Virus record (IMG/VR): IMGVR_UViG_3300036766_000194
Coordinates: 1-64,000 of that record
Length of the DNA stretch: 64,000 nucleotides
Reading direction: 5' to 3' (one strand)
Position 1 is the stretch's first letter. Every line of letters begins with the position of its first letter. Position numbers and translations under genes: made by a program. Under the pieces are notes generated by a model, which saw only the letters and a program-made list of their open reading frames with translations, was not told where the DNA came from and made no database searches. Below, one piece after another: positions 1-63,917 of the stretch.

Positions 1-1241
1 ATGACCAAGGGAACAAAGTTCAGCGTGATCTGGCTGAATACGATGTTTTGGTGCGGGACTTAACCGGGCGGGAAATTCTCAAGAAGGTATTGGCGAAACA
101 CCCAGGACCGTTCTTAAACTCAACGACTCTACAGAGAAAGCCGTTTGGTCCTCGTACAACGGACAGATATTTTGACGAATCCCAAATGACCGCGTTGAAC
201 GGGTCATTGAATCTGGTGCCGTGTTTGACAAAAGGCGGGAAGACTCTCTGGGTGGAATCTTCTAAAGTAGATGCCAACCAGGACGCCATAGGACTTTGGA
301 AAGTGGTAGTTCCCGCCGCGTCTGGCCCTACCCCGCGTCCTGATGCTCTAGGCCGATTCATCCTTCTAGGCAACACTGGTTGGATACTTCCGCCAGGTTC
401 CGTCTGTAGCGAAACCTATCTCGTGGTTTTCACATCTTTAGATGAGGAAGAAGCCAAACGAGCACTGGTTTTTGTTCGTTCAAAACTTTCTCAATTCCTG
501 TTGTATCTTCACGCTGGAGGTAATAACGTAAGTCAAAAGTCCTTCTCCTTCGTCCCTCTTATGGACCTCAGCCAATCCTGGGACGACGCCAAACTGGCGG
601 CCCATTTCAATCTCACAGCTGAAGAAGTCGCCTACATAGAAAGCAAAATCAAATGAGGATCTTATGAAGTTGAGCAGTTTCATCCGAGAGCAGCTATCCC
701 ATCCCAAACGAATCATTGTGGTTGGAAATCCGCCGTACCAGAAGGGCGCGGGGCGGCTTTCCACCACCCTCTATCACAAATTCATCGAAGCCGCACAGGA
801 GTTCGCGGAAGAAGTTCTCTTTGTGATCCCCTCCCGTTGGTACGCCGGGGGCAAGGGATTAGACGGATTTCGCAAAGCCACGCTCACCGAAGGCCACGTA
901 TACCAATTACGTGATTTCGCAGATGCGAGAGCCATATTTCCAAACGTTGACATCTCAGGTGGTGTTTGTTTTCTCCACTGGAAGAAGGACTACACGGGGC
1001 TGTGCAATTGGACGGATGACCAAGGGAACAAAGTTCAGCGTGATCTGGCTGAATACGATGTTTTGGTGCGGGACTTAACCGGGCGGGAAATTCTCAAGAA
1101 GGTATTGGCGAAACACCCAGGACCGTTCTTAAACTCAACGACTCTACAGAGAAAGCCGTTTGGTCCTCGTACAACGGACAGATATTTTGACGAATCCCAA
1201 ATGACCGCGTTGAACGGGTCATTGAATCTGGTGCCGTGTTT
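1..1241 (+). repeat. Direct repeat of at least 226 bp (1-226 = 1016-1241) between tandem MTase paralogs
   Basis: Base-by-base identity at offset 1015. Sequences then diverge and reconverge in gaagaagtcgcctacatagaaagcaaaatcaa at both 3' ends. Confidence 0.95.
3..656 (+). CDS. 5'-partial Eco57I/TaqI-like adenine methyltransferase catalytic/specificity half (copy A)
   Basis: Open frame runs off the window start. nt 1-226 are identical to 1016-1241 of the NPPY gene downstream. C-terminus WDDAKLA...EEVAYIESKIK is shared. Confidence 0.8.
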   Translation, partial: DQGNKVQRDLAEYDVLVRDLTGREILKKVLAKHPGPFLNSTTLQRKPFGPRTTDRYFDESQMTALNGSLNLVPCLTKGGKTLWVESSKVDANQDAIGLWKVVVPAASGPTPRPDALGRFILLGNTGWILPPGSVCSETYLVVFTSLDEEEAKRALVFVRSKLSQFLLYLHAGGNNVSQKSFSFVPLMDLSQSWDDAKLAAHFNLTAEEVAYIESKIK

Positions 1242-1668
1242 AACCGCCAGGGGGAAAATGCTCTGGGTTGAGGCCGTTAGAGTGGATTCTAATCAAGACG
1301 CCGTAGGTCTTTGGAAAGTGGTCACTGCTGCCGCTGGAGCAGCCAGCGGACGAGCCGGGAACGACGGCAAGTACAACATCATCGGTAACTCGTGCCACCT
1401 GTTGCCACCGGGAACGGTTTGCACGGAGACCTTTCTGGTGTTATTCTCTTCGGCGGAAGAAATCCAAGCAACAGTCTTCCTTGCGTACCTTCGCACCAGA
1501 TTTGCTCAATTCTTGTTGAGCTTGCGCGCCACCATGAATTTGAGCGCTTCCTCTTTCTCCTGGGTGCCGCTTCTCGACTTCACCCAATCCTGGGACGACG
1601 CCAAGCTCGCCGTCCACTTCGGCCTCACGCCGGAAGAAGTCGCCTACATAGAAAGCAAAATCAAGTGA
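664..1668 (+). CDS. N6-adenine DNA methyltransferase, motif IV plus target-recognition half (copy B)
   Basis: IVVGNPPY motif IV, LYHKFIE, VIPSRWY, FPNVDISGGVC. No SAM-binding motif I in this ORF. Confidence 0.85.
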   Translation: MKLSSFIREQLSHPKRIIVVGNPPYQKGAGRLSTTLYHKFIEAAQEFAEEVLFVIPSRWYAGGKGLDGFRKATLTEGHVYQLRDFADARAIFPNVDISGGVCFLHWKKDYTGLCNWTDDQGNKVQRDLAEYDVLVRDLTGREILKKVLAKHPGPFLNSTTLQRKPFGPRTTDRYFDESQMTALNGSLNLVPCLTARGKMLWVEAVRVDSNQDAVGLWKVVTAAAGAASGRAGNDGKYNIIGNSCHLLPPGTVCTETFLVLFSSAEEIQATVFLAYLRTRFAQFLLSLRATMNLSASSFSWVPLLDFTQSWDDAKLAVHFGLTPEEVAYIESKIK

Positions 1669-2129
1669 TCCACACCAAACAAAAAATCGCAGATTTCGGT
1701 GAAGTCTTCACCTCGGCTAAGACCGTGGAAGAGATGCTCGATATGCTTGACTGGGGTGACCCCGGTAGTGTCTTTGTGGAAACTTCCTGCGGTGAAGGGG
1801 CTTTTCTAACGGCTATTTTACGCAGGCGCGTGGAGGCCCTAAAGACAAGTCATACCCTGCGCCAAGCTCTCAGCATCACCCTCAATACTGTGTGGGGTCG
1901 GGAGATACAACGTAAAAATGCTCAAGCCTGCCTCCACCGTCTTCACAGTGTGGTAGCTGAATATACCGATGATGAAGAATTTCTTCTCTACGCGGCGGCT
2001 GTCCTTCAGTATCAAATCAAGTGCGGGGACGGCTTAAAATTCAAGATGGGACCGTGCTTTGACCAACTTCCCGAAGATGTCAAAAAGCACAGGATAGACA
2101 AGATACGAACGCACAACCAGCGTCGCTAA
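1665..2129 (+). CDS. Stand-alone SAM-binding half of an adenine methyltransferase (motifs X/I)
   Basis: GTG start overlaps the TGA of the upstream gene (GTGA). FGEVFTS and VETSCGEGAFL motifs. Confidence 0.8.
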   Translation: MIHTKQKIADFGEVFTSAKTVEEMLDMLDWGDPGSVFVETSCGEGAFLTAILRRRVEALKTSHTLRQALSITLNTVWGREIQRKNAQACLHRLHSVVAEYTDDEEFLLYAAAVLQYQIKCGDGLKFKMGPCFDQLPEDVKKHRIDKIRTHNQRR

Positions 2130-3010
2130 TAATAATATCGAAGTTTGCGTAATTCACCTAGTCGTATTGCTTCATAACGATTAAACTCGCATAAACATCC
2201 CTGCATGTCTTGCGCATCTAGAACTTTTTCTAATTTCAATTCTTGACGTAATTGATTGACTTCATTTGCCCATTGAAGTTGTTCTGCTAGAGTCATATCT
2301 ATCATTCGCCAGAAACCACCCTTACTTCGTGTTCCCTGTTTTGTGGTACTCATGCTGGTTAGCCAAGGGAGGCCGTTTACTCGGTTCAATCCACGAACTG
2401 AGCCTGGACCGGGTACTACAAAAGTCCACCAATCTCTGGCCCCGCGTAACCACTTAGTATATTTCAAGTCAGCTATAATCTGAGAACTGAACCACGGGCC
2501 TATGTTTTTTGTTTTTGACAAACGTGCATGGTAACTAGCTAAGGCTTCATTTTCAACTGGCCGCAAATTTATTCGTTGCTCCCAAATTGGAGAGAGTACA
2601 ATATCTGCTAGCAGTTGAGATTGAGTACCCTTATGACCGGGCACCACCAGCTGGTAGGCTTGAGTATTTAGGGTCTTTTCACCCCGCGCTTTACGGTCCC
2701 TGAGAATTGTCTTAAATTTACTTGGATCCCATGGTACGGGATAACCGAGTTCCTCTAAAGTTTCAGTGTGATTAGTTCCCCGGCGAGCAACAAGGAGAGC
2801 AAACCACAAATCTGGGTCGTTTTCATGGGGATCACGCCAGTTGATTTTAATCCACTTAGAAACTTTGTCATCCTCTCGTCGTAAATTACAGAAAAAATGA
2901 TGCTGTAGTATCATATCTTCTGTCCAAGGTCGTGGCTCCCCAGCCTCCTTTTTGACCCGGATGCGTTCTCTTTCAACCATGAAGATTCGTAATGGTTCTA
3001 AATTTTTCAT
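2126..3010 (-). CDS. aGPT-Pplase1 / 5-hmdU DNA kinase helical-domain family protein (copy 1)
   Basis: ERERIRVKKEAGEPRPWTEDMILQHHFFCNLRREDD, IADLKYT, PGPGSVRGLNR and D.QGCLCEF match this DNA-glycosylase-fold family. Start placed at ATG 3010. Confidence 0.75.
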   Translation of the reverse strand: MKNLEPLRIFMVERERIRVKKEAGEPRPWTEDMILQHHFFCNLRREDDKVSKWIKINWRDPHENDPDLWFALLVARRGTNHTETLEELGYPVPWDPSKFKTILRDRKARGEKTLNTQAYQLVVPGHKGTQSQLLADIVLSPIWEQRINLRPVENEALASYHARLSKTKNIGPWFSSQIIADLKYTKWLRGARDWWTFVVPGPGSVRGLNRVNGLPWLTSMSTTKQGTRSKGGFWRMIDMTLAEQLQWANEVNQLRQELKLEKVLDAQDMQGCLCEFNRYEAIRLGELRKLRYYY

Positions 3011-3405
3011 CCGACTATTTCTTTCTGACTGAGCCGATTTTGACAACCTATATTGCGTGAAATTATGATTTTTGCTCGTTTAATAGCTTTTGGATTTTGA
3101 GTTATGGATTGAACAAAAGTCAGTAGTCGTTTACGACAAGTCGTGATGTTTTTCTTTTGAATTTCTCCTGCAAATATAGTCTCAAGAGCAGTTAATACGG
3201 CTTCCTCCGTTCCTCCCAATGCTTGAGTTCGTTTCTGAAGCAATTGAATTACAATGGCCCCATCACCACAAGTTGGCTCAAGTAATATAGCACTTACATC
3301 TCCCCAGATTTTGACAGGTAATTGGTTGAGAGCTAAGGATACCAATGGATCAGGACTAAATACTTCCCCGAATTTTCGTACTTGTTTTCGTTTCCCCTGT
3401 TTCAT
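3007..3405 (-). CDS. Second stand-alone SAM-binding methyltransferase half
   Basis: KFGEVFSP and LEPTCGDGAI motifs. Coupled to the stop of the upstream gene (TAAcATG). Confidence 0.75.
   Translation of the reverse strand: MKQGKRKQVRKFGEVFSPDPLVSLALNQLPVKIWGDVSAILLEPTCGDGAIVIQLLQKRTQALGGTEEAVLTALETIFAGEIQKKNITTCRKRLLTFVQSITQNPKAIKRAKIIISRNIGCQNRLSQKEIVG
3011..3035 (+). repeat. 25-bp direct repeat, copy 1
   Basis: ccgactatttctttctgactgagcc, identical to 5632-5656. Confidence 0.95.
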
Positions 3406-3406
3406 G

Positions 3407-5179
3407 TTATTCCGTCATCAAGGCAAGAATAGCCGGGAGTTCACTTTCAAGATCAAGGTGCTTTGCCGTTTCTGTGATACTCCAAGATCTGGCTAAATCA
3501 AAATAAGGTAGGATGTTAAATCGCTCCTGACACACATCTGTGGTCCCTGTGTATTGCTCAAGCGCGTAGCGAAAGATGGGATTGTTTATGATTGCGCGAC
3601 CATTTTCCATGCTCTGCGCAGACCCTTCTGCCAAAACTAAATACTCCTCACCACACCTAACGCCGGGGTTGAGTACCTTTGCGCCGTTATGACCTCGTAA
3701 AAGGCCTCTTGCCACTAAGGGGACTAAACCATAAGTACAGCTTCTTCCTATGATTAAAGTGGATTCACTTGGGGAAGGAAATTTGAATGCAGAATCAGCG
3801 ACAAACTGAATTGTCCCTCCTGTCAATTTACCAGCAGTGGTGAAAACTGGAGCAGTTCCTGGAGGAAGTTTGCTATAGCCGCATACATAGGGGTCGCGTA
3901 CCCCAAAGCGCGACAGACTGGCTCCGGCCCAAGGGCCATGACGTTCAACAGCGGCCAAAAGTTTCTTGATAATCGTAACAGCAAGAGTGGTATTGGGTAT
4001 TACCGGGAGTTCGTTCAAATTACGCTGCTCCGCCTGTTGTCCATATATACAAAATTCTGCTAGGGGGCGGCCTTGGTGATTTTTGTCCCAGTAAACAATA
4101 TCAAGCCCCAAATCAGGATTTGCGTCCAACCATTCTTTAGGATGGGGAAGATGTAGAATACGATACACGCCGGGAAGATACTTAGCTCGCACCTTTTCAT
4201 GCTGCAAACTCCAACGCCAACGGGCTGGGGCAATATCAACCATCATATCCGGGTTGTCTTTTAAGTCACGGTCAATAAAGCTCCACCATTGACCAAAGGG
4301 GTGGTTTTTTATGAGTATTAAGGGCATACTTGTTAATACCTGATTTGATTGGAGATGATCAATATCTATTCCCCACCTATCTAAAACAGAATACATGACT
4401 TGAGGGTATGTAAGTGGTTGGCGGTTTTTATCAGTAAGACCCCCAACTCGTAGCCGTGAAATGATTGAGGGATCAAGTTTTAATAATCCCAGGACAAACG
4501 CTCCGTCTCGCTCCGACAAAACTTGAATATTGCTTGTAGGTATGCGATCAACTAATCGGGTATCATCAAGCGCGACTGTTACAAGTTCCCGGCTATTCAC
4601 AGGATGTACTACAGCCTTCACTTGACCCCTATTTGCGCTACTTCTCTTTTTATTGGATGGGGCATAAATTTTAGATAATTCACTTTCAAAGGTTGGGTTT
4701 TGGGGCGATTTTGTGACACTGGAAGGTAGAAGCGAATCGGGGTTAATTAATTCGTAGATAAATCCCCGCACTGGATCTGCTTTATACTTCCAAAGTTCAA
4801 ACGGATAAGCTACGAAACTTCCGTTGGCATCTTGGTAAAAGGACCTTTGGAGTAATCGAACAAACCGGGAGCCATACCCTGTTGCCACAAACTTGATAGG
4901 GCCGCTTTTTCCGTATCGTTCTTGAATGCGTAGAAAGTATTCTTCTCCGCGTGCAGTGTGACCATCATCAAGGTCGTGTACCATGGCCTCAATGGGTCCG
5001 AAATTCTCTTTGTTTTTATAGAGAATATCTGTCCTACCCCCACCAGAAAGGGTAACTTCGCGCTCCCCCGTTTCTGCGCCCAAAATGGACAAGTGGCGTA
5101 GGATATGTTCTTGAAGATCATCTTCATTATAATCTGGAATCATTACGGGCATGGCAGCGAGTTGACGTAGAGGATCCAT
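3407..5179 (-). CDS. PD-(D/E)XK (NucS-like) nuclease fused to a divergent MTase catalytic/specificity region
   Basis: N-terminal GRTDILY...IEAM...DDGH. Central IKNHPF...APARWRW aligns by eye with GNPPY...IPSRWY. C-terminus EEYLVL...PYFDLARSW aligns with the ETYLVV...PLMDLSQSW specificity domain. Confidence 0.6.
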   Translation of the reverse strand: MDPLRQLAAMPVMIPDYNEDDLQEHILRHLSILGAETGEREVTLSGGGRTDILYKNKENFGPIEAMVHDLDDGHTARGEEYFLRIQERYGKSGPIKFVATGYGSRFVRLLQRSFYQDANGSFVAYPFELWKYKADPVRGFIYELINPDSLLPSSVTKSPQNPTFESELSKIYAPSNKKRSSANRGQVKAVVHPVNSRELVTVALDDTRLVDRIPTSNIQVLSERDGAFVLGLLKLDPSIISRLRVGGLTDKNRQPLTYPQVMYSVLDRWGIDIDHLQSNQVLTSMPLILIKNHPFGQWWSFIDRDLKDNPDMMVDIAPARWRWSLQHEKVRAKYLPGVYRILHLPHPKEWLDANPDLGLDIVYWDKNHQGRPLAEFCIYGQQAEQRNLNELPVIPNTTLAVTIIKKLLAAVERHGPWAGASLSRFGVRDPYVCGYSKLPPGTAPVFTTAGKLTGGTIQFVADSAFKFPSPSESTLIIGRSCTYGLVPLVARGLLRGHNGAKVLNPGVRCGEEYLVLAEGSAQSMENGRAIINNPIFRYALEQYTGTTDVCQERFNILPYFDLARSWSITETAKHLDLESELPAILALMTE

Positions 5180-5631: not shown

Positions 5632-5656
5632 CCGACTATTTCTTTCTGACTGAGCC
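5632..5656 (+). repeat. 25-bp direct repeat, copy 2
   Basis: Identical to 3011-3035. Confidence 0.95.
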
Positions 5657-5719: not shown

Positions 5720-6646
5720 GTGTCGGATAATCAGTTACAAAGACTGCTGGATTTTATGGTAGAGCGGGAGCATATCCGAAAACTCAAGGATTCCGGACAA
5801 CTGTGGCCTTGGTCAAACGATCTCATCTTTCAGAATTTCTTCATTAGCAATCTCCGCTGTGAAGACGACAAAACAACGCGATGGCTGAAAACTAACTGGC
5901 GTGACCCCCACGAGGACAATCCTGATCTTTGGTTCTCAGAAGTCATCTTTCGACGTGGTATAAATTTCCCAGCCACTGCAGCAGAATTAGGCTTTCCCGT
6001 CCCCTGGAATCCTGAGAAATTCAAGAAAGTCGTAGAGGCTCGCAAGGCTCAAAAGCTCCCTTGGTGTAATGGTCGAGCCTATAAGCTGATGGTCGGACAC
6101 AAGAAGTCTTCTGGGGGTTTTCACGGTTCCCAGGAAGACATGTTAGTTCACTATGTATTCAATCCCGTTTGGGAATTGCGTAAGGATCTTCGTGTTCAGG
6201 TGAAAGAATCTATCGCTCACTATTTTGATCGTCTATCAAAAGCTCCCTGGATGGGTGGTTGGTACAGTTACCGTGTGATTTGTGACTTGAAATACACAAA
6301 ATGGTTGCGCGGCGCAGACGACTGGTGGAAATTTGTGGTGCCCGGCCCCGGTAGTATCCGAGGATTAAATAGAATTTTAGGGAGGCCCATTAACCAAAAT
6401 CTTCTACTCGCGCCACCTGGTCAGACAGGTGTTCTCCCAAGATTCACCGCAGCCGAACGCATTGCTTGGATTGAAGAAGTCAATGTTTTGAGATTAATAG
6501 TGGCGGCTTTGGGGTTCAATGAACCAGAACTCACCGGAATCACCGCTCAAACAATGGGTGGGGCACTTTGTGAGTTTGACAAGTATGAACGGATTCGTTT
6601 AGGAGACGGTGGTAAGGTTCGACCCTATTGTCACCAATCGCTGTAG
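5720..6646 (+). CDS. aGPT-Pplase1 / 5-hmdU DNA kinase helical-domain family protein (copy 2)
   Basis: Paralog of 2126-3010 (NWRDPHE.NPDLWF, DLKYTKWLRGA.DWW.FVVPGPGS.RGLNR, LCEFDKY). GTG start after gggaacgct. Confidence 0.75.
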   Translation: MSDNQLQRLLDFMVEREHIRKLKDSGQLWPWSNDLIFQNFFISNLRCEDDKTTRWLKTNWRDPHEDNPDLWFSEVIFRRGINFPATAAELGFPVPWNPEKFKKVVEARKAQKLPWCNGRAYKLMVGHKKSSGGFHGSQEDMLVHYVFNPVWELRKDLRVQVKESIAHYFDRLSKAPWMGGWYSYRVICDLKYTKWLRGADDWWKFVVPGPGSIRGLNRILGRPINQNLLLAPPGQTGVLPRFTAAERIAWIEEVNVLRLIVAALGFNEPELTGITAQTMGGALCEFDKYERIRLGDGGKVRPYCHQSL

Positions 6647-15165: not shown

Positions 15166-17934
15166 ATGTCTACTTCGGACAAACTCGTTACAATTAAGAC
15201 GGAGCCACTTAGCTTCGTTAAGAATTTGTCCGTAGAATATTCCCCCAATATTGAAGATCATTTTCCGTTTCCTACCGTTCGTGAAGCTCAGCGTCGTGCT
15301 ATGTCTGCTATTGTTCGCGCTAAGGAAGAGGGAAAGAAGTTTGTAATCATAGAAGCCCCTACGGGTATAGGAAAATGTCTAGGCCGGGGCACCCTAGTTT
15401 TGATGTTTGATGGATCTTTGCGGGAAGTTGAGGGTCTTCAAATCGGGGATCAGTTGATGGGACCAGATTCTAAACCCAGAACTATTTTATCTTTGACGCA
15501 AGGCACAGGTGAAATGTTTGAGATTTCTTCCGACACCAAAAAGAAAACGTCTCATTTTGAGTCCTATGTAGTGAACGGAGACCATGTCCTGGCATTGAAA
15601 TATTCTGGAGAGATAAGTCAAGGGCAGAGTTCCGACCTAGATACGGTTTATCATAGAAAATTTGTGATTGGGGATCACTTAGAACTTTCAGTCAGTGATT
15701 ATATTCAAAAATGCAAATGGTTCAAGCATTGTGTGAAAGGTTACAAAGTGGGTGTAGAATTTCCTGAAAGTCCCCTTACCGTAGACCCCTATTTTCTTGG
15801 TCTTTGGTTGGGTGACGGCTCCAGTGATTCTTCCGAAATTACGACCGCCGATGAAGAGATTAAGAAATACATTTACGAGGTCGCGGCTCAGTATGGACTA
15901 GGCGTGACCGTTGACGATAGGAAAGACGAAAGTGACTGCCCTTCTTATCACATATCGCGGGGAAGAAACAACAAAGAAGAAAATGGTCTCCTGATACAAA
16001 TGCAAAATTTGAAGGTGATTAACAACAAACATATACCCATGAACTACCTCATAAATTCGCGCTCAAATCGCTTGAAATTACTAGCCGGGTTGGTGGATTC
16101 AGATGGCTATGTTTCGAGCGGAACTTACGAGATAGCCACTAAGTGGGCGCATTTAGCAAATCAAATTAGGTACCTAGCCCGCTCTTTGGGTTTTGCAGCA
16201 CAATTTGAGATGAAGTGGGTTAAAAATCAATCAGAAAAGCGATTTAAGTCTTATGTACTCACTTTTTACGGCACCGGGCTAGAGGAACTCCCCGTTTTGC
16301 TTCCCCGTAAAAAGTCTCAGTCTAGGAAACAAATCAAGGATGCACTACGTTCGGGTCTGAACGTAGTTTCAAAAGGACTTGGAGACTATTTCGGTTTTAC
16401 CTTAAATGGTGACGGACTGTTTCTTCTAGGTGACTTTACGGTCACTCATAATAGCGGTATCGCTATTGCTGCCGCTTCCTGGGCTAAGACCTGGAATGCT
16501 CCAGGTTATGAACCAGGTGCTTATATTCTCACCCCTCAAAAAATTCTTGCTCAACAGTATATGAATGATTTTGCAAACTTTGGTTTGCTTGAACTTCGTG
16601 GTAAGGCTAATTATCACTGCGACACTTTTGACACCGATTGCGACAGCGGCGCGTTGATGAACGATTCTACTGAGGGTGGAGACAACCGTACCACCTGCCC
16701 CAGTTGTCCCTATAAACTAGCAAAGAAGGCTTTCATCGCCAACTCTCTGGGCACTACCAATTTTGCCTACTATTTGAATGAAACTCAGTATGCTGGGCAA
16801 CTTCCTCGTCGCAATATGTTGGTTCTGGATGAAGGACACAATACCGAGAGTAACCTACTTAATTTTGCCGACACGGTTATTTCTAAGTGGCGCATGAAGG
16901 AAATCGGACTTGGCGCTCTTCCTGTTTTCAAACCGGGTGAAAATATTGCCTGCCGCGATTGGCTGTTTCATACCTTCATCCCCCAATGCCAGCAGTTTAT
17001 GTCGGAATTGGAAAATCAGGTTGACGAAGCCAAGTTTGAAGGTCGTAAGGAAGATGCTTTGAAGTTGGTTAAGAAACTGGATAATTACGATAAATATATC
17101 TGCCGTCTGAATCGTTTTATGAATTCTGACGATCTCTCCAATTGGCTCTGCTTCACTACTGAAGACGATGAGAAGCGGGACACCCAGGCTGAGATTCTTA
17201 TCAAGCCTCTCACTGCTACTCTTGTGGCTGATGAGATTCTCTTCCGTAAGGCTTCCATGATTGTAATCATGAGCGCGACCATTCTTGACATAGCGACTTT
17301 TATGCGCAGCCTGGGGATAAAGGATGAGGAAGCCGTTGTTCTTACCCTCCCCAGCGAATTCCCAGTTGAAAATCGTCCCATCTATTACAAGCCCGTGGGC
17401 AAAATGAATTGGAACGAACGTGAAGCTACCATGCCCAGAATGCTAAAGTTCATTGAGAAGATTATGGATAAATATGAAGGCAAAAAGGGCATCATTCATA
17501 CTCACAGCTATGCCTTTAACAAGGCTATTACCGCTTACCTGCGTAACACTAAACATGCTAATAGGATTATCACACATACAGGGATACCTGGGTCTCGTGA
17601 TGCCGCTGTTGCGGAGCATTTTGAGCGTCCTGATGCCACGGTTTTGATTTCGCCCAGTCTGAATGAGGGATTGGATCTTAAAGAAGATCTGGCGCGGTTT
17701 TGCATCTTGATCAAGGTACCGTTTGCCTTCTTAGATCCCTATACTAAGGCTAGAATGCGTCGCGATCCTGCTTGGTATACTCTTCAAGCATCGCTTACTA
17801 TGATTCAAGCTACGGGGAGAATTATTCGTACCAAGGATGACAAGGGTCATTGCTTTATCCTTGACGCCGACTTTTCCAGTTTCCTTAATAGGGCAAGGCT
17901 ACCAACGTGGTGGACGGATGCCCTTGTTTTTTAG
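15166..17934 (+). CDS. DinG/Rad3-like SF2 helicase with intein
   Basis: EAPTGIGK|SG Walker A split by an intein. DEGH, SAT, HTHSY, EGLD and QATGRIIR motifs. Cys cluster. Confidence 0.9.
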   Translation: MSTSDKLVTIKTEPLSFVKNLSVEYSPNIEDHFPFPTVREAQRRAMSAIVRAKEEGKKFVIIEAPTGIGKCLGRGTLVLMFDGSLREVEGLQIGDQLMGPDSKPRTILSLTQGTGEMFEISSDTKKKTSHFESYVVNGDHVLALKYSGEISQGQSSDLDTVYHRKFVIGDHLELSVSDYIQKCKWFKHCVKGYKVGVEFPESPLTVDPYFLGLWLGDGSSDSSEITTADEEIKKYIYEVAAQYGLGVTVDDRKDESDCPSYHISRGRNNKEENGLLIQMQNLKVINNKHIPMNYLINSRSNRLKLLAGLVDSDGYVSSGTYEIATKWAHLANQIRYLARSLGFAAQFEMKWVKNQSEKRFKSYVLTFYGTGLEELPVLLPRKKSQSRKQIKDALRSGLNVVSKGLGDYFGFTLNGDGLFLLGDFTVTHNSGIAIAAASWAKTWNAPGYEPGAYILTPQKILAQQYMNDFANFGLLELRGKANYHCDTFDTDCDSGALMNDSTEGGDNRTTCPSCPYKLAKKAFIANSLGTTNFAYYLNETQYAGQLPRRNMLVLDEGHNTESNLLNFADTVISKWRMKEIGLGALPVFKPGENIACRDWLFHTFIPQCQQFMSELENQVDEAKFEGRKEDALKLVKKLDNYDKYICRLNRFMNSDDLSNWLCFTTEDDEKRDTQAEILIKPLTATLVADEILFRKASMIVIMSATILDIATFMRSLGIKDEEAVVLTLPSEFPVENRPIYYKPVGKMNWNEREATMPRMLKFIEKIMDKYEGKKGIIHTHSYAFNKAITAYLRNTKHANRIITHTGIPGSRDAAVAEHFERPDATVLISPSLNEGLDLKEDLARFCILIKVPFAFLDPYTKARMRRDPAWYTLQASLTMIQATGRIIRTKDDKGHCFILDADFSSFLNRARLPTWWTDALVF
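15376..16452 (+). mobile_element. Class 1 intein with LAGLIDADG endonuclease (359 aa)
   Basis: C1 (CLGRGT), block B NGDH, LGLWLGDG and LAGLVDSDG, ends THN followed by Ser+1. Confidence 0.92.
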
Positions 17935-59541: not shown

Positions 59542-59697
59542 AAATCATAGATCTATCAGGACAACAATAAAGGCTACACAAAAGAAAACTGCACTGTTTG
59601 CTGTAAAACTTGCAACTATGCCAAAGGGAATCGTTATACCTTTGAAGAATGGGTTGCAATGACAAAAGCACTTCGAAAAGTAAGATCCAAGTTTTGA
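59538..59697 (+). pseudogene. Internally deleted HNH endonuclease remnant
   Basis: MKIIDLSGQ start joined out of frame to DNNKGYTKENCTVCCKTCNYAKG. Confidence 0.65.
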
Positions 59698-59738
59698 GCA
59701 GTATAAAGGAAGTCAGGATTTCAGGACCTTTGCAAATC

Positions 59739-62700
59739 ATGTCGAAAACCTACGGAACACTAGAATACGACAAGAAGAAACGGGTCTTCCTGATTGAGTG
59801 TGCTCCTCATGTTGCTATTAGGGTCAAGCGCGTATTCGCTAAGATAAACACTTACGAGTATGGTAAGCTGAAGTTATCTGCTACTCCTGAGAACGCCAGG
59901 GATCTTGAATGGTTCCTGGAACGCTATCCCATGGAAGTAAAGCACCCAGAAATTCTTAAGGAACTCGCCACCCAACAAAAAGAACGCGCCATCCTAGTTG
60001 AACAACTTTTGAATGGATATTCTGCTCGCCAATTCCCCTTGAAACTTCCAGCCCGAGACTATCAATCCTTGGCTGCTAATATGTGGTTAGTAGCAGGAGG
60101 ACTCCTTCTAGCGGACGATGTGGGTCTCGGGAAGGCTCAGACCCTTTCCGCTAAGATCCTCACTCCTACGGGATGGACTACCATGGGAGAAATTAAAGTG
60201 GGTGACGCCGTAGTCGATCCCGACGGCGGCATAGGGTATGTAGAGGGGGTGTATCCTCAAGGAGAGAAGGAAATCTTCCTCATGACAACTTCTGATGGGG
60301 TGGAAGTTGAGTGTTGTGACGAGCACTTGTGGTGGGTCCAAACTCACAATGACCGAATGCGTAATAGTTCGCGTGTTGTACCTTTGAAGGATTTTCGTAA
60401 TGATTTGTTTGGAAAGGAACACGATAGTTGCTGGCACGCCAAATGGTTTATTCCAGTAGTTCAACCTCTTGTTATGCAAAGAATTGAGTTTTCCTTTCCT
60501 CCCTACCTTTTGGGATGTCTTTTAGGAGACGGTTCCCTTAGGAACAGCATACAAACGTTGACCTGTTCGGAGTCTCAGATTATAGAAAAGATAAAGAAAT
60601 CACTTCCTTTGGATTTGCGGGTTAAGAATGCTAGCAACCCCATAGAATGGTCTTTTCCTAGAAAAATCTATAGCAACAAGCCGCACCCCTTTACAGTCCA
60701 ACTGCGCAAATGGGGTCTTTGGACAAAATACTCCTACGAAAAGTGGATCCCTCTCGATTGTTTCTTTTGGTCAGTGGAACATCGTATTGAACTTCTTCGT
60801 GGCTTAATGGATACCGATGGAGAATGTGGCAAATCCTATGGTGCGTATTTCTCTTCTACCTCTAAGCAACTCGCTGATGGATTGGCGGACTTAGTTCGTT
60901 CCTTGGGGGGACTAGCTAAAGTTAAGTATGTAGGGAAGGGAAACTATCGAAAGGAAGATGGTACTGTAAAGGTGTGTAGGGATTCTTGGAATGTCTCTGT
61001 TCAAACTTTATTTGTGCCTTTTCATTTGAAAAGAAAAACTGAACGTTGGCACAAGCCTAATATGGCTAGAGCGATAAAGAAAGTGGAGTCAATTGGTTAC
61101 AAAATCGCCAAATGTATCAAAGTTTCTACTAAGCGTCATTTATACATTACGGATGGATATCTTCCAACTCACAACACTTGCACAGCCATCGCAGGACTCA
61201 CGGACTCTAGGCTCCTCCCTTCCTTAATCGTATGTCCCACCCACTTACCCCCTCAATGGGAGAATGAGGTTCATAAGTTCACCGATCTTACGGTCCATCG
61301 TCTTCGTCAAGCCACTCCTTATGACATCACCAAATATACCAACGGTATATTCCCCGACGTGATAATTTCCAACTATCATAAATTGTCAGGATGGGCTGAG
61401 ACAATTGCTCCCTGCGTCAAGAGCATCATTTTCGATGAAGTTCAAGACTTACGTCATACAGGTTCTAACAAATATATGGCAGCTAAACACATAGCGGATT
61501 CATGTGAGTGGCGTCTGGGCCTCAGTGTGGGACCAGATTCTTTGTTGCTATTACGGGGTGGCCCCTTTGGGGGTGGGTGGCAGGGGACTATAGAACAGGC
61601 TTATCAGATGGTTTTAACTTCATCCAGGGTGATCTTGGAAGGTGGGTATAGTCTCCTACCTGTGAAACACTCGAATATAGAAAGTCGCGGTTGGGAACAA
61701 GATGGCTTTTGTTGGAAAACAGTTAAGACATTTATACGGCATAAGTGTGACAAGCCAGTCCGAGAAATAGAAGTAAGAGGTTCTCGTCTTCTCCTCACCG
61801 ATGATCACTCCTTGTTCAAAATTACTAAGGGGAAGATAGCATGTGTATCCAGTGAGCAGTTGAAACTTCATGACTGTTTGCCTTTGGATAATGGAAAGAA
61901 TTGGGAAATCGGGGCAAATAAAGAAGTCGTGTTAGATATTGCTTCTATCATAGATCCTCATAAAAAGGTTCAAGTCTTGGTGGACATTTCTGGTTTAACT
62001 CGTAAGGAGGTAGGTGTAAATCCTCAAAACTGGTATAATTTTAAGAAAGAAAGGAAATTTGGACCAAGAATACCGCTTAGATATTTTCTAACCCATCGTC
62101 GTAAATTACCAGCACCGCAAGGTTTATATTTTAGCCAAACTAGAGGCAAGGCTAGAGTGATTGGGAATCTGACTTTGCGGCTTAGTAATTGGGCCTATGT
62201 TTTGGGATTCTTTTTAGGGGCTGGTTGGCTTAATAGGGATAGCCGAGGTGTTATTACGAGTGTCAGCTTTTCTGTGGATGCACCTCATTACAAAAAATTG
62301 TGCACTGCCTTGGGAGCCATTAAAGAAACACCCCTGCGTATCCGAGAACGCTTCAGCACAGTTGCAATGGTTGAGATTGAGTGCGATAACAAATTCTTCG
62401 CAGAAATTTTGGCTTACGTTTTCAAGGGGGCAAAGAAATGTTGGGAAAAAGAACTTCCTACAGAATGGACAACTACTTGGTCCAGGAAAGCTCGTGAACA
62501 GCTATTGGAAGGACTTAGAGATTCAGACGGCGTAGCAGCTGGTTCTAATCCAACTACTAGTAGTGCCTATACAACCACTTCTCTGGCTTTAGCAAAATCA
62601 ATTCTTCTCTTGCTGAGGAGTCTAGGTATATCGGGGAGTTACAGTGAACACTCTCCGAGTCTTGGGGGGTGGGTTAAGGAAAAGGACGGTTCATTACGTC

Positions 62701-63917
62701 AGATACAAGGTAAAAGAATTTCCTACATAATTGGGTGGAGTGTTGGAACGGGTCATTGGGGTTCGGCTTTGCCCTATAAATCCCCCGAATTGTGGAATCA
62801 AGCCCCAATACATAGGATTAAGGATGTCGTTCCGCCATCACATGTATACGATTTAGAAATGGAAGGTCATCCTTCTTTTTGCCTTGAAGGAATTGGTATG
62901 CTAGGAAAAAATTCCGCGACTCCAATTTACAACTATGGAGGAGAGATGTTTAACGTTCTAGATGTTCTCTATCCAGGTTGCCTAGGAACTTGGGATGAAT
63001 TTAGCCGCGAGTGGGTTGCTTATGCTTTTGGGGATAAACCCAAGATAAAGGATCCTAAAGCGTTTGGTGTTTATACTCGTGAAGCTGGACTCATGCTACG
63101 TCGGACCCGTATAGAGGTACGCCGCGAATTGCCTGAGGTTACGGTCGTCCCACACAGCATTGATTGTGACACGGCCATCCTTGACAAGATGAAGGGCAAG
63201 GCTATTGAGCTTGCCAAACTGATCCTTGCGCAGAAGCAAGATTTTCGTGGGCAAAAGATGCAAGCTGCTGGAGAATTTGATTTGCGTATGCGTCAAGCTA
63301 CAGGTATTGCCAAGGCTCCCTATGTTTGCGAATTTGTAAAATTCTTGATACAAGAGAGTAACGAACCTATTGTATTGTTCGGATGGCACAGGGAAGTTTA
63401 CGAGATCTATCTAGAAAAATTGAAAGAGTTTAATCCTGTGATGTATACAGGGAGTGAGACAGCTGTACAAAAGGAAGAGTCTAAGCAGAAATTTATCAAA
63501 GGTCAGAGTAAGGTTATGATAATCAGCCTCCGCTCTGGGGCGGGGCTGGATGGTTTACAGGATATTTGTCACATCGCGGTATTCGGAGAGTTAGACTGGT
63601 CAAATTCTGTTCATACTCAGTGTGTGGGTCGTATTCATAGAGATGGTCAGGATGAACCTGTCATCGCCTATTATTTGCTGAGTACTGATGGCTGTGATCC
63701 TATTATGTGCGATGTCTTAGGGATCAAACGGCAGCAATCTGAAGGCATATTAAATCCGTTAGGTGAGTTCGTAGGAGAAAACATAATACGGGAGCAGTAT
63801 ATAAGGGACCTAGCCGCCGATTTTTTGACGAAACAGGGAGTTGACGTTGAGAAGATTGAAAAACCCAAAGAAATCTCTGAAACACAAGTTTCCTCAGATA
63901 GCCCAGGAATGGCATGA
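59739..63917 (+). CDS. SNF2-family helicase with two inteins
   Basis: LADDVGLGK|T, FDEVQ, LGL|SATP, GAGLDGL, Q.VGRIHR.GQ. Start placed at ATG 59739. Confidence 0.9.
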   Translation: MSKTYGTLEYDKKKRVFLIECAPHVAIRVKRVFAKINTYEYGKLKLSATPENARDLEWFLERYPMEVKHPEILKELATQQKERAILVEQLLNGYSARQFPLKLPARDYQSLAANMWLVAGGLLLADDVGLGKAQTLSAKILTPTGWTTMGEIKVGDAVVDPDGGIGYVEGVYPQGEKEIFLMTTSDGVEVECCDEHLWWVQTHNDRMRNSSRVVPLKDFRNDLFGKEHDSCWHAKWFIPVVQPLVMQRIEFSFPPYLLGCLLGDGSLRNSIQTLTCSESQIIEKIKKSLPLDLRVKNASNPIEWSFPRKIYSNKPHPFTVQLRKWGLWTKYSYEKWIPLDCFFWSVEHRIELLRGLMDTDGECGKSYGAYFSSTSKQLADGLADLVRSLGGLAKVKYVGKGNYRKEDGTVKVCRDSWNVSVQTLFVPFHLKRKTERWHKPNMARAIKKVESIGYKIAKCIKVSTKRHLYITDGYLPTHNTCTAIAGLTDSRLLPSLIVCPTHLPPQWENEVHKFTDLTVHRLRQATPYDITKYTNGIFPDVIISNYHKLSGWAETIAPCVKSIIFDEVQDLRHTGSNKYMAAKHIADSCEWRLGLSVGPDSLLLLRGGPFGGGWQGTIEQAYQMVLTSSRVILEGGYSLLPVKHSNIESRGWEQDGFCWKTVKTFIRHKCDKPVREIEVRGSRLLLTDDHSLFKITKGKIACVSSEQLKLHDCLPLDNGKNWEIGANKEVVLDIASIIDPHKKVQVLVDISGLTRKEVGVNPQNWYNFKKERKFGPRIPLRYFLTHRRKLPAPQGLYFSQTRGKARVIGNLTLRLSNWAYVLGFFLGAGWLNRDSRGVITSVSFSVDAPHYKKLCTALGAIKETPLRIRERFSTVAMVEIECDNKFFAEILAYVFKGAKKCWEKELPTEWTTTWSRKAREQLLEGLRDSDGVAAGSNPTTSSAYTTTSLALAKSILLLLRSLGISGSYSEHSPSLGGWVKEKDGSLRQIQGKRISYIIGWSVGTGHWGSALPYKSPELWNQAPIHRIKDVVPPSHVYDLEMEGHPSFCLEGIGMLGKNSATPIYNYGGEMFNVLDVLYPGCLGTWDEFSREWVAYAFGDKPKIKDPKAFGVYTREAGLMLRRTRIEVRRELPEVTVVPHSIDCDTAILDKMKGKAIELAKLILAQKQDFRGQKMQAAGEFDLRMRQATGIAKAPYVCEFVKFLIQESNEPIVLFGWHREVYEIYLEKLKEFNPVMYTGSETAVQKEESKQKFIKGQSKVMIISLRSGAGLDGLQDICHIAVFGELDWSNSVHTQCVGRIHRDGQDEPVIAYYLLSTDGCDPIMCDVLGIKRQQSEGILNPLGEFVGENIIREQYIRDLAADFLTKQGVDVEKIEKPKEISETQVSSDSPGMA
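60135..61175 (+). mobile_element. Class 3 intein (Ala1) with LAGLIDADG endonuclease (347 aa)
   Basis: Starts AQTL. WCT signature: EHLW, block F KCI, PTHN then Thr+1. LGCLLGDG and LRGLMDTDG. Confidence 0.88.
61524..62912 (+). mobile_element. Ser1 intein with degenerate LAGLIDADG domain (463 aa)
   Basis: Starts SVGPDS, block B TDDH, block F VYDLE, ends GKN then Ser+1. Motifs LGFFLGAG and LEGLRDSDG. Confidence 0.85.

What the first reader, a model, noticed from the sequence alone, without database searches (positions are those of the whole stretch)
1..3405. Split, modular adenine methyltransferase system: separate SAM-binding halves and tandem catalytic halves with swapped specificity domains
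Seen: gene 664-1668 has NPPY but no motif I. Two separate short ORFs (1665-2129, 3007-3405) carry only FGEVF/xxCGxG. The upstream paralog is 100% identical over at least 226 bp, diverges across the presumed target-recognition region, and reconverges at the last 32 nt. Established: gamma-class/Eco57I-like MTases normally carry motif I, motif IV and the TRD on one chain, and TRD exchange between conserved flanks changes specificity. Inference: the phage assembles MTases from shared SAM-binding subunits plus several specificity subunits, and conserved flanks allow TRD shuffling to match host R-M systems.
Basis: partly seen in the sequence, partly recalled or inferred. Interest (0 to 1): 0.72.

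Follow-up and report, generated by a model that had tools for sequence, protein, structure and literature searches.

The report
Split phage adenine methyltransferase genes
A 300-kb phage encodes DNA adenine methyltransferases as separate SAM-binding and catalytic/recognition proteins; this is a rearranged phage version of the known DrdVI-type "split methylase/RM" family, and its recognition modules are visibly exchanged between strains.

Summary
Gene B (664-1668) has NPPY and a TaqI-like recognition domain but no motifs X/I-III. The short ORFs 1665-2129 and 3007-3405 carry only motifs X, I, II and III. The upstream paralogue A shares 100-nt, 226-nt and 32-nt runs of 100% identity with B.

There are three pairs, not "two halves plus tandem genes". 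A third SAM-binding half is fused to the C-terminus of an upstream helicase. The 590-aa ORF (3407-5179) is a third, divergent catalytic/recognition half.

All components are homologous to the three genes of pDrdVI. REBASE authors call that family "split methylase/RM genes", and co-expressed M1+M2 give m6A. A complex prediction supports B binding the 154-aa half (0.88; best control 0.00).

Comparing three near-identical strains shows recognition-domain replacement, a segment swap between A and B, a 77-bp in-frame inversion, and a compensated frameshift that turns A's NPPY into NPPV.

Depth and independent assemblies show the tandem copy is real.

Sharing of one SAM subunit, and a role in matching host R-M systems, remain untested. 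The helicase/nuclease relatives suggest a restriction-type function is equally possible.

Verdict: a new variant of a known kind.

The parts
1..656 (+). 3' two-thirds of paralogue A (catalytic/TRD half). The gene starts at G000:C1:299403 and wraps across the contig junction; it is 333 aa. Its motif IV reads NPPV in this strain.
1..226 (+). Copy 1 (in A) of the 226-nt block that is 100% identical to 1016-1241 in B. The contig start coincides with the first base of the block.
664..1668 (+). Paralogue B: catalytic half (motifs IV-VIII; NPPY at nt 727-738) plus a TaqI-like TRD and the conserved tail. It has no motifs X or I-III.
815..914 (+). 100-nt block identical between A and B. It has double depth in the source run.
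1016..1241 (+). Copy 2 (in B) of the 226-nt identical block. It spans the end of the catalytic domain and the first part of the TRD.
1142..1218 (+). 77-nt segment (also at 127-203 in A) that is reverse-complemented, with 1 mismatch, in the B orthologues of L001 and L013. It is in frame and open in both orientations.
1132..1141 (+). Left arm, ACTCAACGAC, of the 10-nt inverted repeat flanking the 77-nt segment. The right arm is at 1219-1228; it has 2 mismatches here and is perfect in L001.
1633..1664 (+). 32-nt tail identical to 621-652 in A (encodes EEVAYIESKI).
1665..2129 (+). SAM-binding half XI154 (motifs X, I, II, III; M1-like). Its GTG start overlaps B's TGA stop.
3007..3405 (-). Second stand-alone SAM-binding half, XI132 (30% identical to XI154). 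Its ATG lies 1 nt after the stop of the 590-aa ORF.
3407..5179 (-). 590-aa third catalytic/TRD half. Residues 298-585 are homologous to B residues 37-329. The probable motif IV variant NHPF (about residues 292-295) was assigned by eye. The N-terminal ~270 aa are unknown and possibly PD-(D/E)xK-like.
2126..3046 (-). Context: HMUDK_hel (5-hmdU DNA kinase helical domain) gene, downstream of XI132 and overlapping its 3' end on the same strand.
5720..6646 (+). Context: second HMUDK_hel paralogue, divergent from the 590-aa gene.

Best explanation
The locus is a phage-borne, rearranged member of the DrdVI/MaeIV-type 'split methylase/RM' family. It encodes gamma-class (Eco57I/TaqI-like) N6-adenine DNA methyltransferase modules as two polypeptides.

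- One chain is a small SAM-binding half (motifs X, I, II, III; strands beta1-3).
- The other is a catalytic/recognition half (motifs IV-VIII, a TaqI-like TRD and a conserved tail).
- The two are inferred to assemble by completing one Rossmann sheet, with beta1 of the small chain lying against beta4 of the large chain.

The phage has three such pairs:
1. An 802-aa SF2 helicase, possibly with a T5orf172/GIY-YIG-like N-terminus, whose C-terminus carries a KSGVFL-type SAM half. It is followed by A.
2. B followed by XI154. This is the canonical, probably active methylase.
3. The 590-aa protein followed by XI132.

A and B are a recent tandem duplication. Homologous recombination keeps them partly homogenised and exchanges or replaces their TRD segments between strains. 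Their first ~50 codons (first ~150 nt) are the least homogenised part of A versus B, are identical between strains (apart from the compensated frameshift), and include about half of the predicted contact residues with the SAM half.

Shown: the anatomy, the homologies, conservation of the split, strain-level mosaicism, and that the tandem is real.

Inferred: heterodimer formation, m6A activity, and which half pairs with which.
For: - B aligns at 35-41% identity over all 334 residues with the C-terminal two-thirds of more than 4000 single-chain Eco57I/N6_Mtase proteins, most of them about 500 aa.
- The short ORFs and the helicase C-terminus align with the N-terminal motifs X-III of those proteins.
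- The B model (pLDDT 85.9) matches CamA, M.TaqI, M.BseCI and BrxX/PglX.
- Complex prediction for B + XI154: ipSAE 0.88, best of 3 controls 0.00. That mark was reached by 58 of 80 solved complexes and by 2 of 110 mismatched pairs. The interface covers B residues 13-25 (beta4/NPPY) and XI154 residues 32-42 (beta1/motif I) and 123-134.
- The split is conserved. L009 has the TRD tail stop overlapping the start of a 54%-identical SAM half. Aeromonas phage Ah1 has Ah1_00104 (NPPF + TRD) followed by Ah1_00103 (SAM half). About-140-aa 'N-6 DNA methylase' clusters are mostly viral.
- Homology to all three pDrdVI genes: XI154 vs the 212-aa protein, 33%, E 1e-19; B vs the 539-aa protein, 28%, E 1e-34; helicase vs the 851-aa helicase, 25%, E 8e-45; helicase C-terminus vs the N-terminus of the 539-aa protein, E 5e-5.
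- Literature: M1-2.DrdVI gives GCAGCC m6A, and M1/M2.MaeIV give GCACY m6A on co-expression. [quoted passage not shown]
- Mosaicism and TRD replacement between strains.
- Two copies are supported by depth and by independent assemblies.
Against: - There is no biochemical or methylome evidence for this phage.
- The complex model may simply recall single-chain methylase folds, and my own alignments were used.
- In DrdVI-type cassettes the large subunit keeps its own KSGVFL-type N-domain. The role of the small M1 protein there is unclear, so 'M1 completes the catalytic half' is an extrapolation.
- A carries NPPV and the 590-aa protein NHPF, so two of the three pairs may not methylate adenine.
- The NHPF assignment was made by eye; hhalign starts three residues after it.
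- Many short hits in the 1.8-billion-protein search could be gene fragments.
Confidence: 0.7

Rival explanations
1. One M1-like SAM-binding subunit (XI154) is shared by both A and B, as M1 serves M2 in DrdVI. The KSGVFL domain on the helicase then acts as a coupler rather than as A's SAM half.
For: - XI154 belongs to the same CGxGxF-type family as the DrdVI M1 protein.
- The helicase C-terminus belongs to the KSGVFL type found at the N-terminus of M2.
- The N-terminal regions of A and B are similar at the protein level.
Against: - The three SAM halves and three catalytic halves sit in adjacent, translationally coupled pairs.
- The first ~50 codons of A and B, which include about half of the predicted contact residues, are the least homogenised part of the two genes.
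Confidence: 0.25
2. The halves are decaying fragments of once-intact methylase genes and have no function.
For: - A has a frameshift-altered motif IV.
- XI154 has a 9-nt deletion relative to its relatives.
- The 590-aa protein is very divergent.
Against: - All ORFs are intact, and the frameshift in A is compensated 24 nt downstream.
- The overlapping stop/start and the split are kept at 54% identity in L009 and in cultured phages.
- Diagnostic motifs are invariant across the short family.
- The same split family is active experimentally.
Confidence: 0.08
3. B and XI154 are made as one circularly permuted chain (order IV-VIII, TRD, X, I-III) by -1 frameshifting at the GTGA overlap.
For: - The XI154 reading frame is open for 270 nt upstream of its start.
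- The phrog_11371 profile carries the TRD tail ahead of motifs X/I.
Against: - In phage Ah1 the two genes are separated by 39 nt containing a hairpin, and the second gene has its own GGAG ribosome-binding site.
- The 590-aa/XI132 pair is separated by a stop plus 1 nt.
- No slippery sequence is evident at 1655-1668.
Confidence: 0.05
4. The tandem A/B duplication, or the circular join, is an assembly artefact.
For: The contig breaks exactly at the 226-nt repeat, and the 127-bp 'terminal repeat' lies inside it.
Against: - The shared block has depth 82, against 36-39 for the unique flanks.
- A 222-nt contig bridges the end of A and the start of B.
- A 15-kb contig joins the N-terminus of A to the shared block.
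- L001 and L013/L014 independently contain the tandem.
Confidence: 0.03
5. Some pairs, especially the 590-aa/XI132 pair (XI132 overlaps the downstream HMUDK_hel gene), are not adenine methylases. Instead they act on hypermodified thymidine or another base as part of the hypermodification pathway.
For: - The genes are interleaved with HMUDK_hel genes (two here, a third at ~236.7 kb), a PLP enzyme, phrog_3271 and a P-loop kinase-like gene.
- Motif IV is non-canonical (NHPF).
- The published thymidine-hypermodification pathways do not include such a step (PMC8989533).
Against: - All recognisable homology is to adenine-specific enzymes.
- Linkage alone is weak evidence.
Confidence: 0.1

Closest known systems
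DrdVI / MaeIV 'split methylase/RM' family (REBASE; pDrdVI NZ_CP031164.1; PMC6430315, PMC10113651)
   Same: - The same three protein families are present: a small M1-like SAM-binding protein, an Eco57I-type catalytic/TRD protein, and a large SF2 helicase.
- The methylase needs, or is cloned as, two genes.
- Related bacterial cassettes L015 and L017 add a T5orf172-like nuclease domain on the helicase.
   Different: - In DrdVI the gene order is M1, M2, helicase, and M2 (539 aa) keeps its own KSGVFL-type N-domain with a Zn-ribbon.
- Here that N-domain is detached and fused to the helicase C-terminus, and the catalytic halves (A, B) start directly at motif IV.
- The M1-like gene follows B rather than preceding it.
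- The catalytic half is tandemly duplicated with mosaic TRDs.
- A third pair carries a different N-terminal extension.
- The host is a 300-kb phage, and the genes lie inside a thymidine-hypermodification cluster.
Single-chain gamma-class N6-adenine methylases with a C-terminal TRD (M.TaqI, CamA, M.BseCI, PglX/BrxX)
   Same: - The fold of B's catalytic sub-domain and TRD.
- NPPY motif IV.
- The motif order X-I-II-III-IV...TRD, if the two chains are read together for the helicase/A pair.
   Different: - The polypeptide is broken between motifs III and IV.
- For B/XI154 and for 590-aa/XI132 the gene order is permuted, with the catalytic half first.
Single-chain helicase-methylase-TRD restriction enzymes (PADLOC model PDLC03626 'REase_MTase_IIG'; Type ISP enzymes such as LlaGI, recalled from my own knowledge)
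   Same: The helicase (residues 119-276) and B (residues 19-111) both match one 1359-position profile, at its positions 148-311 and 1015-1112. This gives the order helicase, then methylase, then TRD.
   Different: - Here the enzyme is split into at least two chains.
- The nuclease domain is unproven: there is no Pfam hit, only a pairwise alignment to a T5orf172-bearing relative.
- A's catalytic Tyr is lost in this strain.
Naturally two-subunit C5-cytosine methylases M.AquI and M.EcoHK31I (PMC3404938)
   Same: A methylase catalytic domain is divided between two polypeptides that must associate.
   Different: - These are a different class (C5-cytosine) and are unrelated in sequence.
- They split at different motifs (within the variable region, or at motif IX).
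TRD/half-TRD shuffling in Type I hsdS genes and phage orphan methylase mosaicism (PMC9957025)
   Same: Specificity modules are exchanged by recombination between conserved flanks, giving within-gene mosaicism between close relatives.
   Different: - No dedicated recombinase was found (no serine-recombinase gene in the genome; tyrosine recombinases were not searched).
- Exchange occurs between tandem direct paralogues and with outside alleles.
- It also includes a single 77-bp inversion at 10-nt inverted repeats.

Membership tests
Gamma-class (Eco57I/TaqI-like) N6-adenine DNA methyltransferase | Motif IV (D/N/S)PP(Y/F/W) after strand beta4 | tested here: met
   B has GNPPYQ. A has NPPV in the window and L001 but NPPY in L014. 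The 590-aa protein has NHPF, assigned by eye.
Gamma-class (Eco57I/TaqI-like) N6-adenine DNA methyltransferase | Motifs X, I, II, III (SAM binding) on the same chain, N-terminal to motif IV | tested here: not met
   These motifs are found only on separate ORFs (1665-2129 and 3007-3405) or on the helicase C-terminus.
Gamma-class (Eco57I/TaqI-like) N6-adenine DNA methyltransferase | Catalytic-domain plus TRD fold | tested here: met
   The B model (pLDDT 85.9) matches CamA, M.TaqI, M.BseCI and BrxX in Foldseek at E 1e-7 to 1e-10. Pfam Eco57I hit at 4.5e-11.
Gamma-class (Eco57I/TaqI-like) N6-adenine DNA methyltransferase | SAM-dependent site-specific m6A formation | not testable with these tools
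   Only assembled contigs of the metagenome runs were available, with no kinetic or Nanopore signal.
DrdVI/MaeIV split methylase/RM family | Small M1-type protein carrying motifs X/I-III | tested here: met
   XI154 vs the pDrdVI 212-aa protein: 33% identity, E 1e-19. XI132 is 30% identical to XI154.
DrdVI/MaeIV split methylase/RM family | Large M2 protein: Eco57I catalytic domain plus TRD | tested here: met
   B vs the pDrdVI 539-aa protein: 28% identity over 95% of B, E 1e-34 (hit H41).
DrdVI/MaeIV split methylase/RM family | M2 retains a KSGVFL-type N-domain, and the gene order is M1-M2-helicase | tested here: not met
   A and B start at motif IV. The KSGVFL domain is on the helicase. The order here is helicase-XI, A, B, M1-like, whereas pDrdVI, L015 and L017 have M1, M2, helicase.
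DrdVI/MaeIV split methylase/RM family | Adjacent large SF2 (ResIII/DEAD) helicase | tested here: met
   The 802-aa protein has a ResIII hit at 8e-09. It is 25% identical to the DrdVI helicase (E 8e-45) and 27% identical to the L015 helicase (E 6e-51).
DrdVI/MaeIV split methylase/RM family | Both methylase genes are needed for methylation | not testable with these tools
   Only a complex prediction is available (0.88; best control 0.00).
Phase-variable (recombinase-driven) specificity shufflons | Site-specific recombinase plus inverted-repeat-flanked alternative TRD cassettes | tested here: not met
   The genome has no PF00239 match. The paralogues are direct repeats. The only inversion is one 77-bp segment with 10-nt inverted repeats. 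Tyrosine recombinases were not searched.

The most novel reading that the evidence does not exclude
The locus is an offensive, reprogrammable restriction apparatus rather than a protective methylase set.

- The nuclease-like/helicase-SAM-half fusion, together with the catalytically dead (NPPV) recognition subunit A, would form ATP-driven, sequence-directed nucleases. The nuclease-like 590-aa/XI132 pair may do the same.
- These would attack unmodified host or competitor DNA.
- The phage's own genome would be shielded by thymidine hypermodification, and by B/XI154 methylation.
- Targets would be re-aimed by TRD cassette exchange and by the in-frame 77-bp inversion.
Probability: 0.15. Interest if true: 0.85.

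Novelty: new variant of a known kind. Interest (0 to 1): 0.55.

Why it matters
- Natural two-chain gamma-class adenine methylases are barely described outside REBASE notes. This phage shows the cleanest form of the split: the catalytic/TRD chain begins at motif IV, and the SAM half is free or fused to a helicase.
- The phage has three paralogous versions in one locus, which makes pairing rules and subunit sharing directly testable.
- The strain comparison is a natural experiment in specificity-module exchange.
- About-140-aa 'N-6 DNA methylase' proteins and about-320-aa NPPY-first proteins are common in phage genomes and are often annotated as hypothetical or as complete methylases (Ah1, PTm1). 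Recognising them as halves would improve methylome and anti-restriction annotation.
- The family offers ready-made split scaffolds for targeted methylation tools.
- Linkage to a thymidine-hypermodification cluster hints at coordinated self/non-self marking.

Tried and rejected
- Sequence search of B and XI154 against PDB chains found nothing meaningful.
- The word-indexed homologue search for the 590-aa protein found only itself.
- The single-sequence AlphaFold model of the 590-aa protein was unusable (pLDDT 34), so no fold search was run on it.
- Its N-terminal PD-(D/E)xK idea rests only on Atlas scores of 0.75-0.79 and a secondary-structure pattern. Pfam at E<=10 gave nothing.
- A T5orf172 domain in the window's helicase has no direct Pfam support. 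It rests only on a pairwise alignment to L015.
- BLASTP of the 590-aa protein against Ah1_00104 was not significant.
- P0007 and P0009 (short B-like proteins) start at contig ends, so I did not count them as evidence for a split.
- The promoter/terminator scan was no better than shuffled controls.
- The open reverse frame of the 77-nt segment is not statistically remarkable, since 2 of the 3 reverse frames are open. I therefore do not claim a programmed switch.
- Only assembled contigs, not raw reads, were available, so minor TRD-swap or inversion variants within one sample could not be assessed.

Full report
**1. Observation**

- B (664-1668, 334 aa) begins at strand beta4/motif IV (KRIIVVGNPPYQ). 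Its only Pfam hit is the distal part of Eco57I (PF07669, 4.5e-11, profile positions 77-171).
- ORF 1665-2129 ('XI154') starts at a GTG overlapping B's TGA. ORF 3007-3405 on the minus strand ('XI132') is the second short ORF. Both carry FGEVF(T/S) and E(T/P)xCGxGA.
- Alignment with full-length relatives shows that both also contain motif II and motif III (IKCGDGL / IGCQNRL). They are therefore complete SAM-binding halves and stop just before motif IV.
- A and B share exact runs of 100, 32, 226 and 32 nt, against 62% identity outside the two long runs (100 and 226 nt).

**2. What lies to the left of the window**

- The genome is one 299,875-bp IMG/VR virus record, rated 100% complete by CheckV and classed as having 'direct terminal repeats'.
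- The 127-bp terminal repeat lies inside the 226-nt A/B block, and the contig starts at the first base of that block. The 'DTR' is therefore a k-mer overlap at a collapsed repeat.
- Joining the ends gives a complete gene A (333 aa; ATG at G000:C1:299403). Its ATG overlaps the stop of an 802-aa ORF at 296998-299406.
- That ORF is an SF2 helicase (ResIII, 8e-09). Its last ~95 residues carry a third X/I module of the KSGVFL type.

**3. A third catalytic half**

- hhalign places residues 298-585 of the 590-aa ORF (3407-5179, minus strand) on B-family residues 37-329 (probability 98.3%, E 1.7e-14).
- tblastn finds its tail in A (E 4e-8).
- Three residues upstream of the hhalign start sits LILIKNHPF. 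I read this, by eye, as beta4 plus a variant motif IV.
- The N-terminal ~270 residues have no family hit. A PD-(D/E)xK nuclease fold is a weak lead only.
- XI132 starts 1 nt after this ORF's stop.
- The genome therefore holds three SAM halves and three catalytic/TRD halves, in three adjacent pairs, and no further copies.

**4. The halves are parts of one domain**

- B is 35-41% identical over its full length to the C-terminal two-thirds of more than 4000 Eco57I/N6_Mtase proteins, most of them about 500 aa.
- Its AlphaFold model (pLDDT 85.9) matches CamA, M.TaqI, M.BseCI and BrxX/PglX.
- A complex prediction for B + XI154 scored ipSAE 0.88, with the best of three controls at 0.00. That mark was reached by 58 of 80 solved complexes and by 2 of 110 mismatched pairs. 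These counts hold only roughly here, because my own alignments were used.
- The predicted interface joins B residues 13-25 (beta4/NPPY) to XI154 residues 32-42 (beta1/motif I) and 123-134 (after beta3). This is what completion of a split Rossmann sheet requires.
- The result supports binding but does not show it. It may also reflect the model's memory of single-chain methylases.

**5. The split is conserved, not a local accident**

- L009 is an NCBI metagenome assembly whose SAM half is 54% identical to XI154. There the TRD tail (...EEVAYIDSTIK, then stop) overlaps the start of the SAM half.
- Cultured Aeromonas phage Ah1 has Ah1_00104 (545 aa; NPPF, TRD tail) followed after 39 nt by Ah1_00103 (166 aa; motifs X, I, II). 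Both are annotated as hypothetical.
- Tenacibaculum phage PTm1 gp277 (344 aa) starts at MKFDIIVGNPPYQ. One HTH gene further on lies gp279, a 335-aa protein that matches the SAM-half profile only weakly (E about 1e-4).
- PHROGs has a 156-position stand-alone family, phrog_21201.
- The ESM Atlas puts XI154 (score 0.97) among 138-157-aa 'N-6 DNA methylase' clusters that are 75-100% viral.
- An exhaustive HMMER search found 1175 relatives. The top 150 are almost all 98-285 aa and lack NPPY. Some of these may be gene fragments.
- In jumbo-phage contig L004, helicase genes precede an unsplit 501-aa methylase with the same tail. This suggests the gene boundary shifted in the window's lineage.

**6. 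Family identification**

- Metagenome relatives L015 and L017 show a three-gene cassette: an XI-only protein, a ~500-aa Eco57I methylase, and a helicase of the same ResIII type. In L015 the helicase is a single 835-aa T5orf172+ResIII protein. In L017 it is split into two ORFs, with only a weaker MUG113 hit at the N-terminus. An XI-only gene directly upstream of a full-length methylase also occurs in L010, L016, L018 and L020, and ~1 kb upstream in L019.
- The same cassette is on pDrdVI of Deinococcus wulumuqiensis: a 212-aa 'DNA methyltransferase', a 539-aa Eco57I protein and an 851-aa DEAD/DEAH helicase.
- Every window component matches its DrdVI counterpart.
- The window helicase aligns from residue 2 to 711 with the L015 helicase, including L015's T5orf172 region.
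- One PADLOC profile, PDLC03626 'REase_MTase_IIG' (1359 positions), is hit by both the helicase and B, at its two ends.
[quoted passage not shown] Cloned M1-M2.MaeIV gives GCACY m6A, and M1-2.DrdVI gives GCAGCC m6A and is typed IIG (PMC10113651, PMC6430315). [quoted passage not shown]
- The kind is therefore known.
- What differs here:
  - M2's own KSGVFL N-domain has been detached and fused to the helicase.
  - A and B are bare catalytic/TRD halves.
  - The M1-like gene follows its partner rather than preceding it.
  - The catalytic half is duplicated.
  - A third pair has another N-terminal extension.

**7. TRD dynamics**

L001 (ENA) and L013/L014 (JGI) come from nearly identical phages: the helicase is 99.9% identical at DNA level, and the 590-aa protein differs at 2 residues. 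A four-way alignment shows the following.
- a. The first 150 nt are paralogue-specific and 100% conserved between the window and L001 (L014's A allele differs only at the compensated frameshift and four nearby substitutions). About half of the predicted contact residues with the SAM half lie in these first ~50 codons.
- b. A ~60-nt middle segment is swapped between the paralogues. The window's B resembles L001's A, and the window's A resembles L001's B.
- c. The 226-nt block is shared by the window's A and B, but L001's A is entirely different there.
- d. There are three unrelated distal TRD segments: window A; window B, which equals L001 B; and L001 A.
- e. The tails are again conserved.

In a second sample, contigs show a TRD tail stop followed by the last ~28 nt of the helicase gene. 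That indicates a different duplication boundary or copy number. TRD exchange between conserved flanks is therefore observed in nature. Its selective driver is not known.

**8. Two further polymorphisms**

- A 77-nt segment in the TRD (1142-1218 in B, 127-203 in A) is reverse-complemented, with 1 mismatch, in the B genes of L001 and L013. It is flanked by a 10-nt inverted repeat and stays in frame. Both orientations encode an F-G at the family's invariant FG position. Because 2 of the 3 reverse frames are open, I treat it as a real inversion polymorphism, not as a demonstrated switch.
- Gene A in the window and in L001 carries a +1 G and, 24 nt later, a -1 T relative to L014. This converts NPPYQIGYHH to NPPVSDRVPP. 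In this strain A probably binds DNA without methylating it.

**9. Context and function**

- The pairs are interleaved with two HMUDK_hel genes (a third copy lies at ~236.7 kb), a PLP-dependent enzyme, phrog_3271 and a small P-loop NTPase with a kinase-like AAA_28 domain.
- A thymidylate-synthase-family gene lies elsewhere in the genome.
- This is the gene set of thymidine hypermodification (PMC8989533), and that paper describes no methylase step.
- Most likely reading: B/XI154 is an active two-chain m6A methylase.
- The helicase fusion with A, and the 590-aa/XI132 pair, resemble the R-M-S parts of helicase- or nuclease-linked restriction enzymes. They may act as restriction or exclusion functions on DNA that lacks the phage's modifications. 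This last part is inference.

**10. Verdict**

This is a new variant of a known, though sparsely published, kind.

Noticed in passing
window 1142-1218 and 127-203; L001:1500-1576; L013:1139-1215: A 77-nt in-frame segment of the TRD is inverted between near-identical strains. It is flanked by the 10-nt inverted repeat ACTCAACGAC/GTCGTTGAGT. Both orientations keep an F-G at the family's invariant position.
   Followed up: partly
G000:C1:299470-299500 (gene A, codons 23-33); L014:3540-3570: A compensated frameshift (+G, then -T 24 nt later) turns NPPYQIGYHH (L014) into NPPVSDRVPP in the window and L001. This removes the catalytic Tyr while keeping the protein intact.
   Followed up: yes
window 1-127 = G000:C1:299749-299875: The record's 'direct terminal repeat' is a 127-bp k-mer overlap lying inside the A/B 226-nt repeat. 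It is not independent evidence of genome termini. Circular closure is still the simplest reading of the assembly graph.
   Followed up: partly
window 2126-3046, 5720-6646; G000:C1:236665-237483, 293657-296838, 111471-111980: This looks like a thymidine-hypermodification gene set: three HMUDK_hel paralogues, a PLP enzyme, phrog_3271, a P-loop (AAA_28) kinase-like gene and a thymidylate-synthase-family gene. The HMUDK_hel proteins consist of the helical domain only.
   Followed up: partly
L015:4-4883, L017:1981-6649, L032 (pDrdVI):2175-6989; also L010, L016, L018-L020: A recurrent bacterial cassette pairs a stand-alone SAM-binding half with a full-length ~500-aa methylase that has its own X/I-like N-domain. 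L015, L017 and pDrdVI add a large ResIII/DEAD helicase (T5orf172-like N-terminus in L015; split into two ORFs in L017). Why an extra SAM half is needed there is unexplained.
   Followed up: partly
run X2 laid on window 1668: In another sediment sample, a contig follows the TRD tail stop with the last ~28 nt of the helicase gene (ACTCTTTTGTGGGATTGAACATCCCGAA). This implies a different tandem-duplication boundary or an extra copy.
   Followed up: no
window 3011-3035 and 5632-5656: An exact 25-nt direct repeat (CCGACTATTTCTTTCTGACTGAGCC). One copy lies immediately upstream of an in-frame ATG (3010) that is an alternative start of the first HMUDK_hel gene (the listed TTG start at 3046 lies upstream of the repeat). 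The other lies in the intergenic region between the 590-aa gene and the second HMUDK_hel gene. It may be a shared regulatory element.
   Followed up: no
L022:2-2339: Three tandem ORFs each end in the same TRD-tail motif, and the contig has no SAM half. This is another tandem array of recognition-type genes.
   Followed up: no
window 15166-17934 and 59649-63917: Two large ORFs (922 and 1422 aa) combine hits to terminase-large-subunit-like P-loop PHROG families with helicase/primase families.
   Followed up: no
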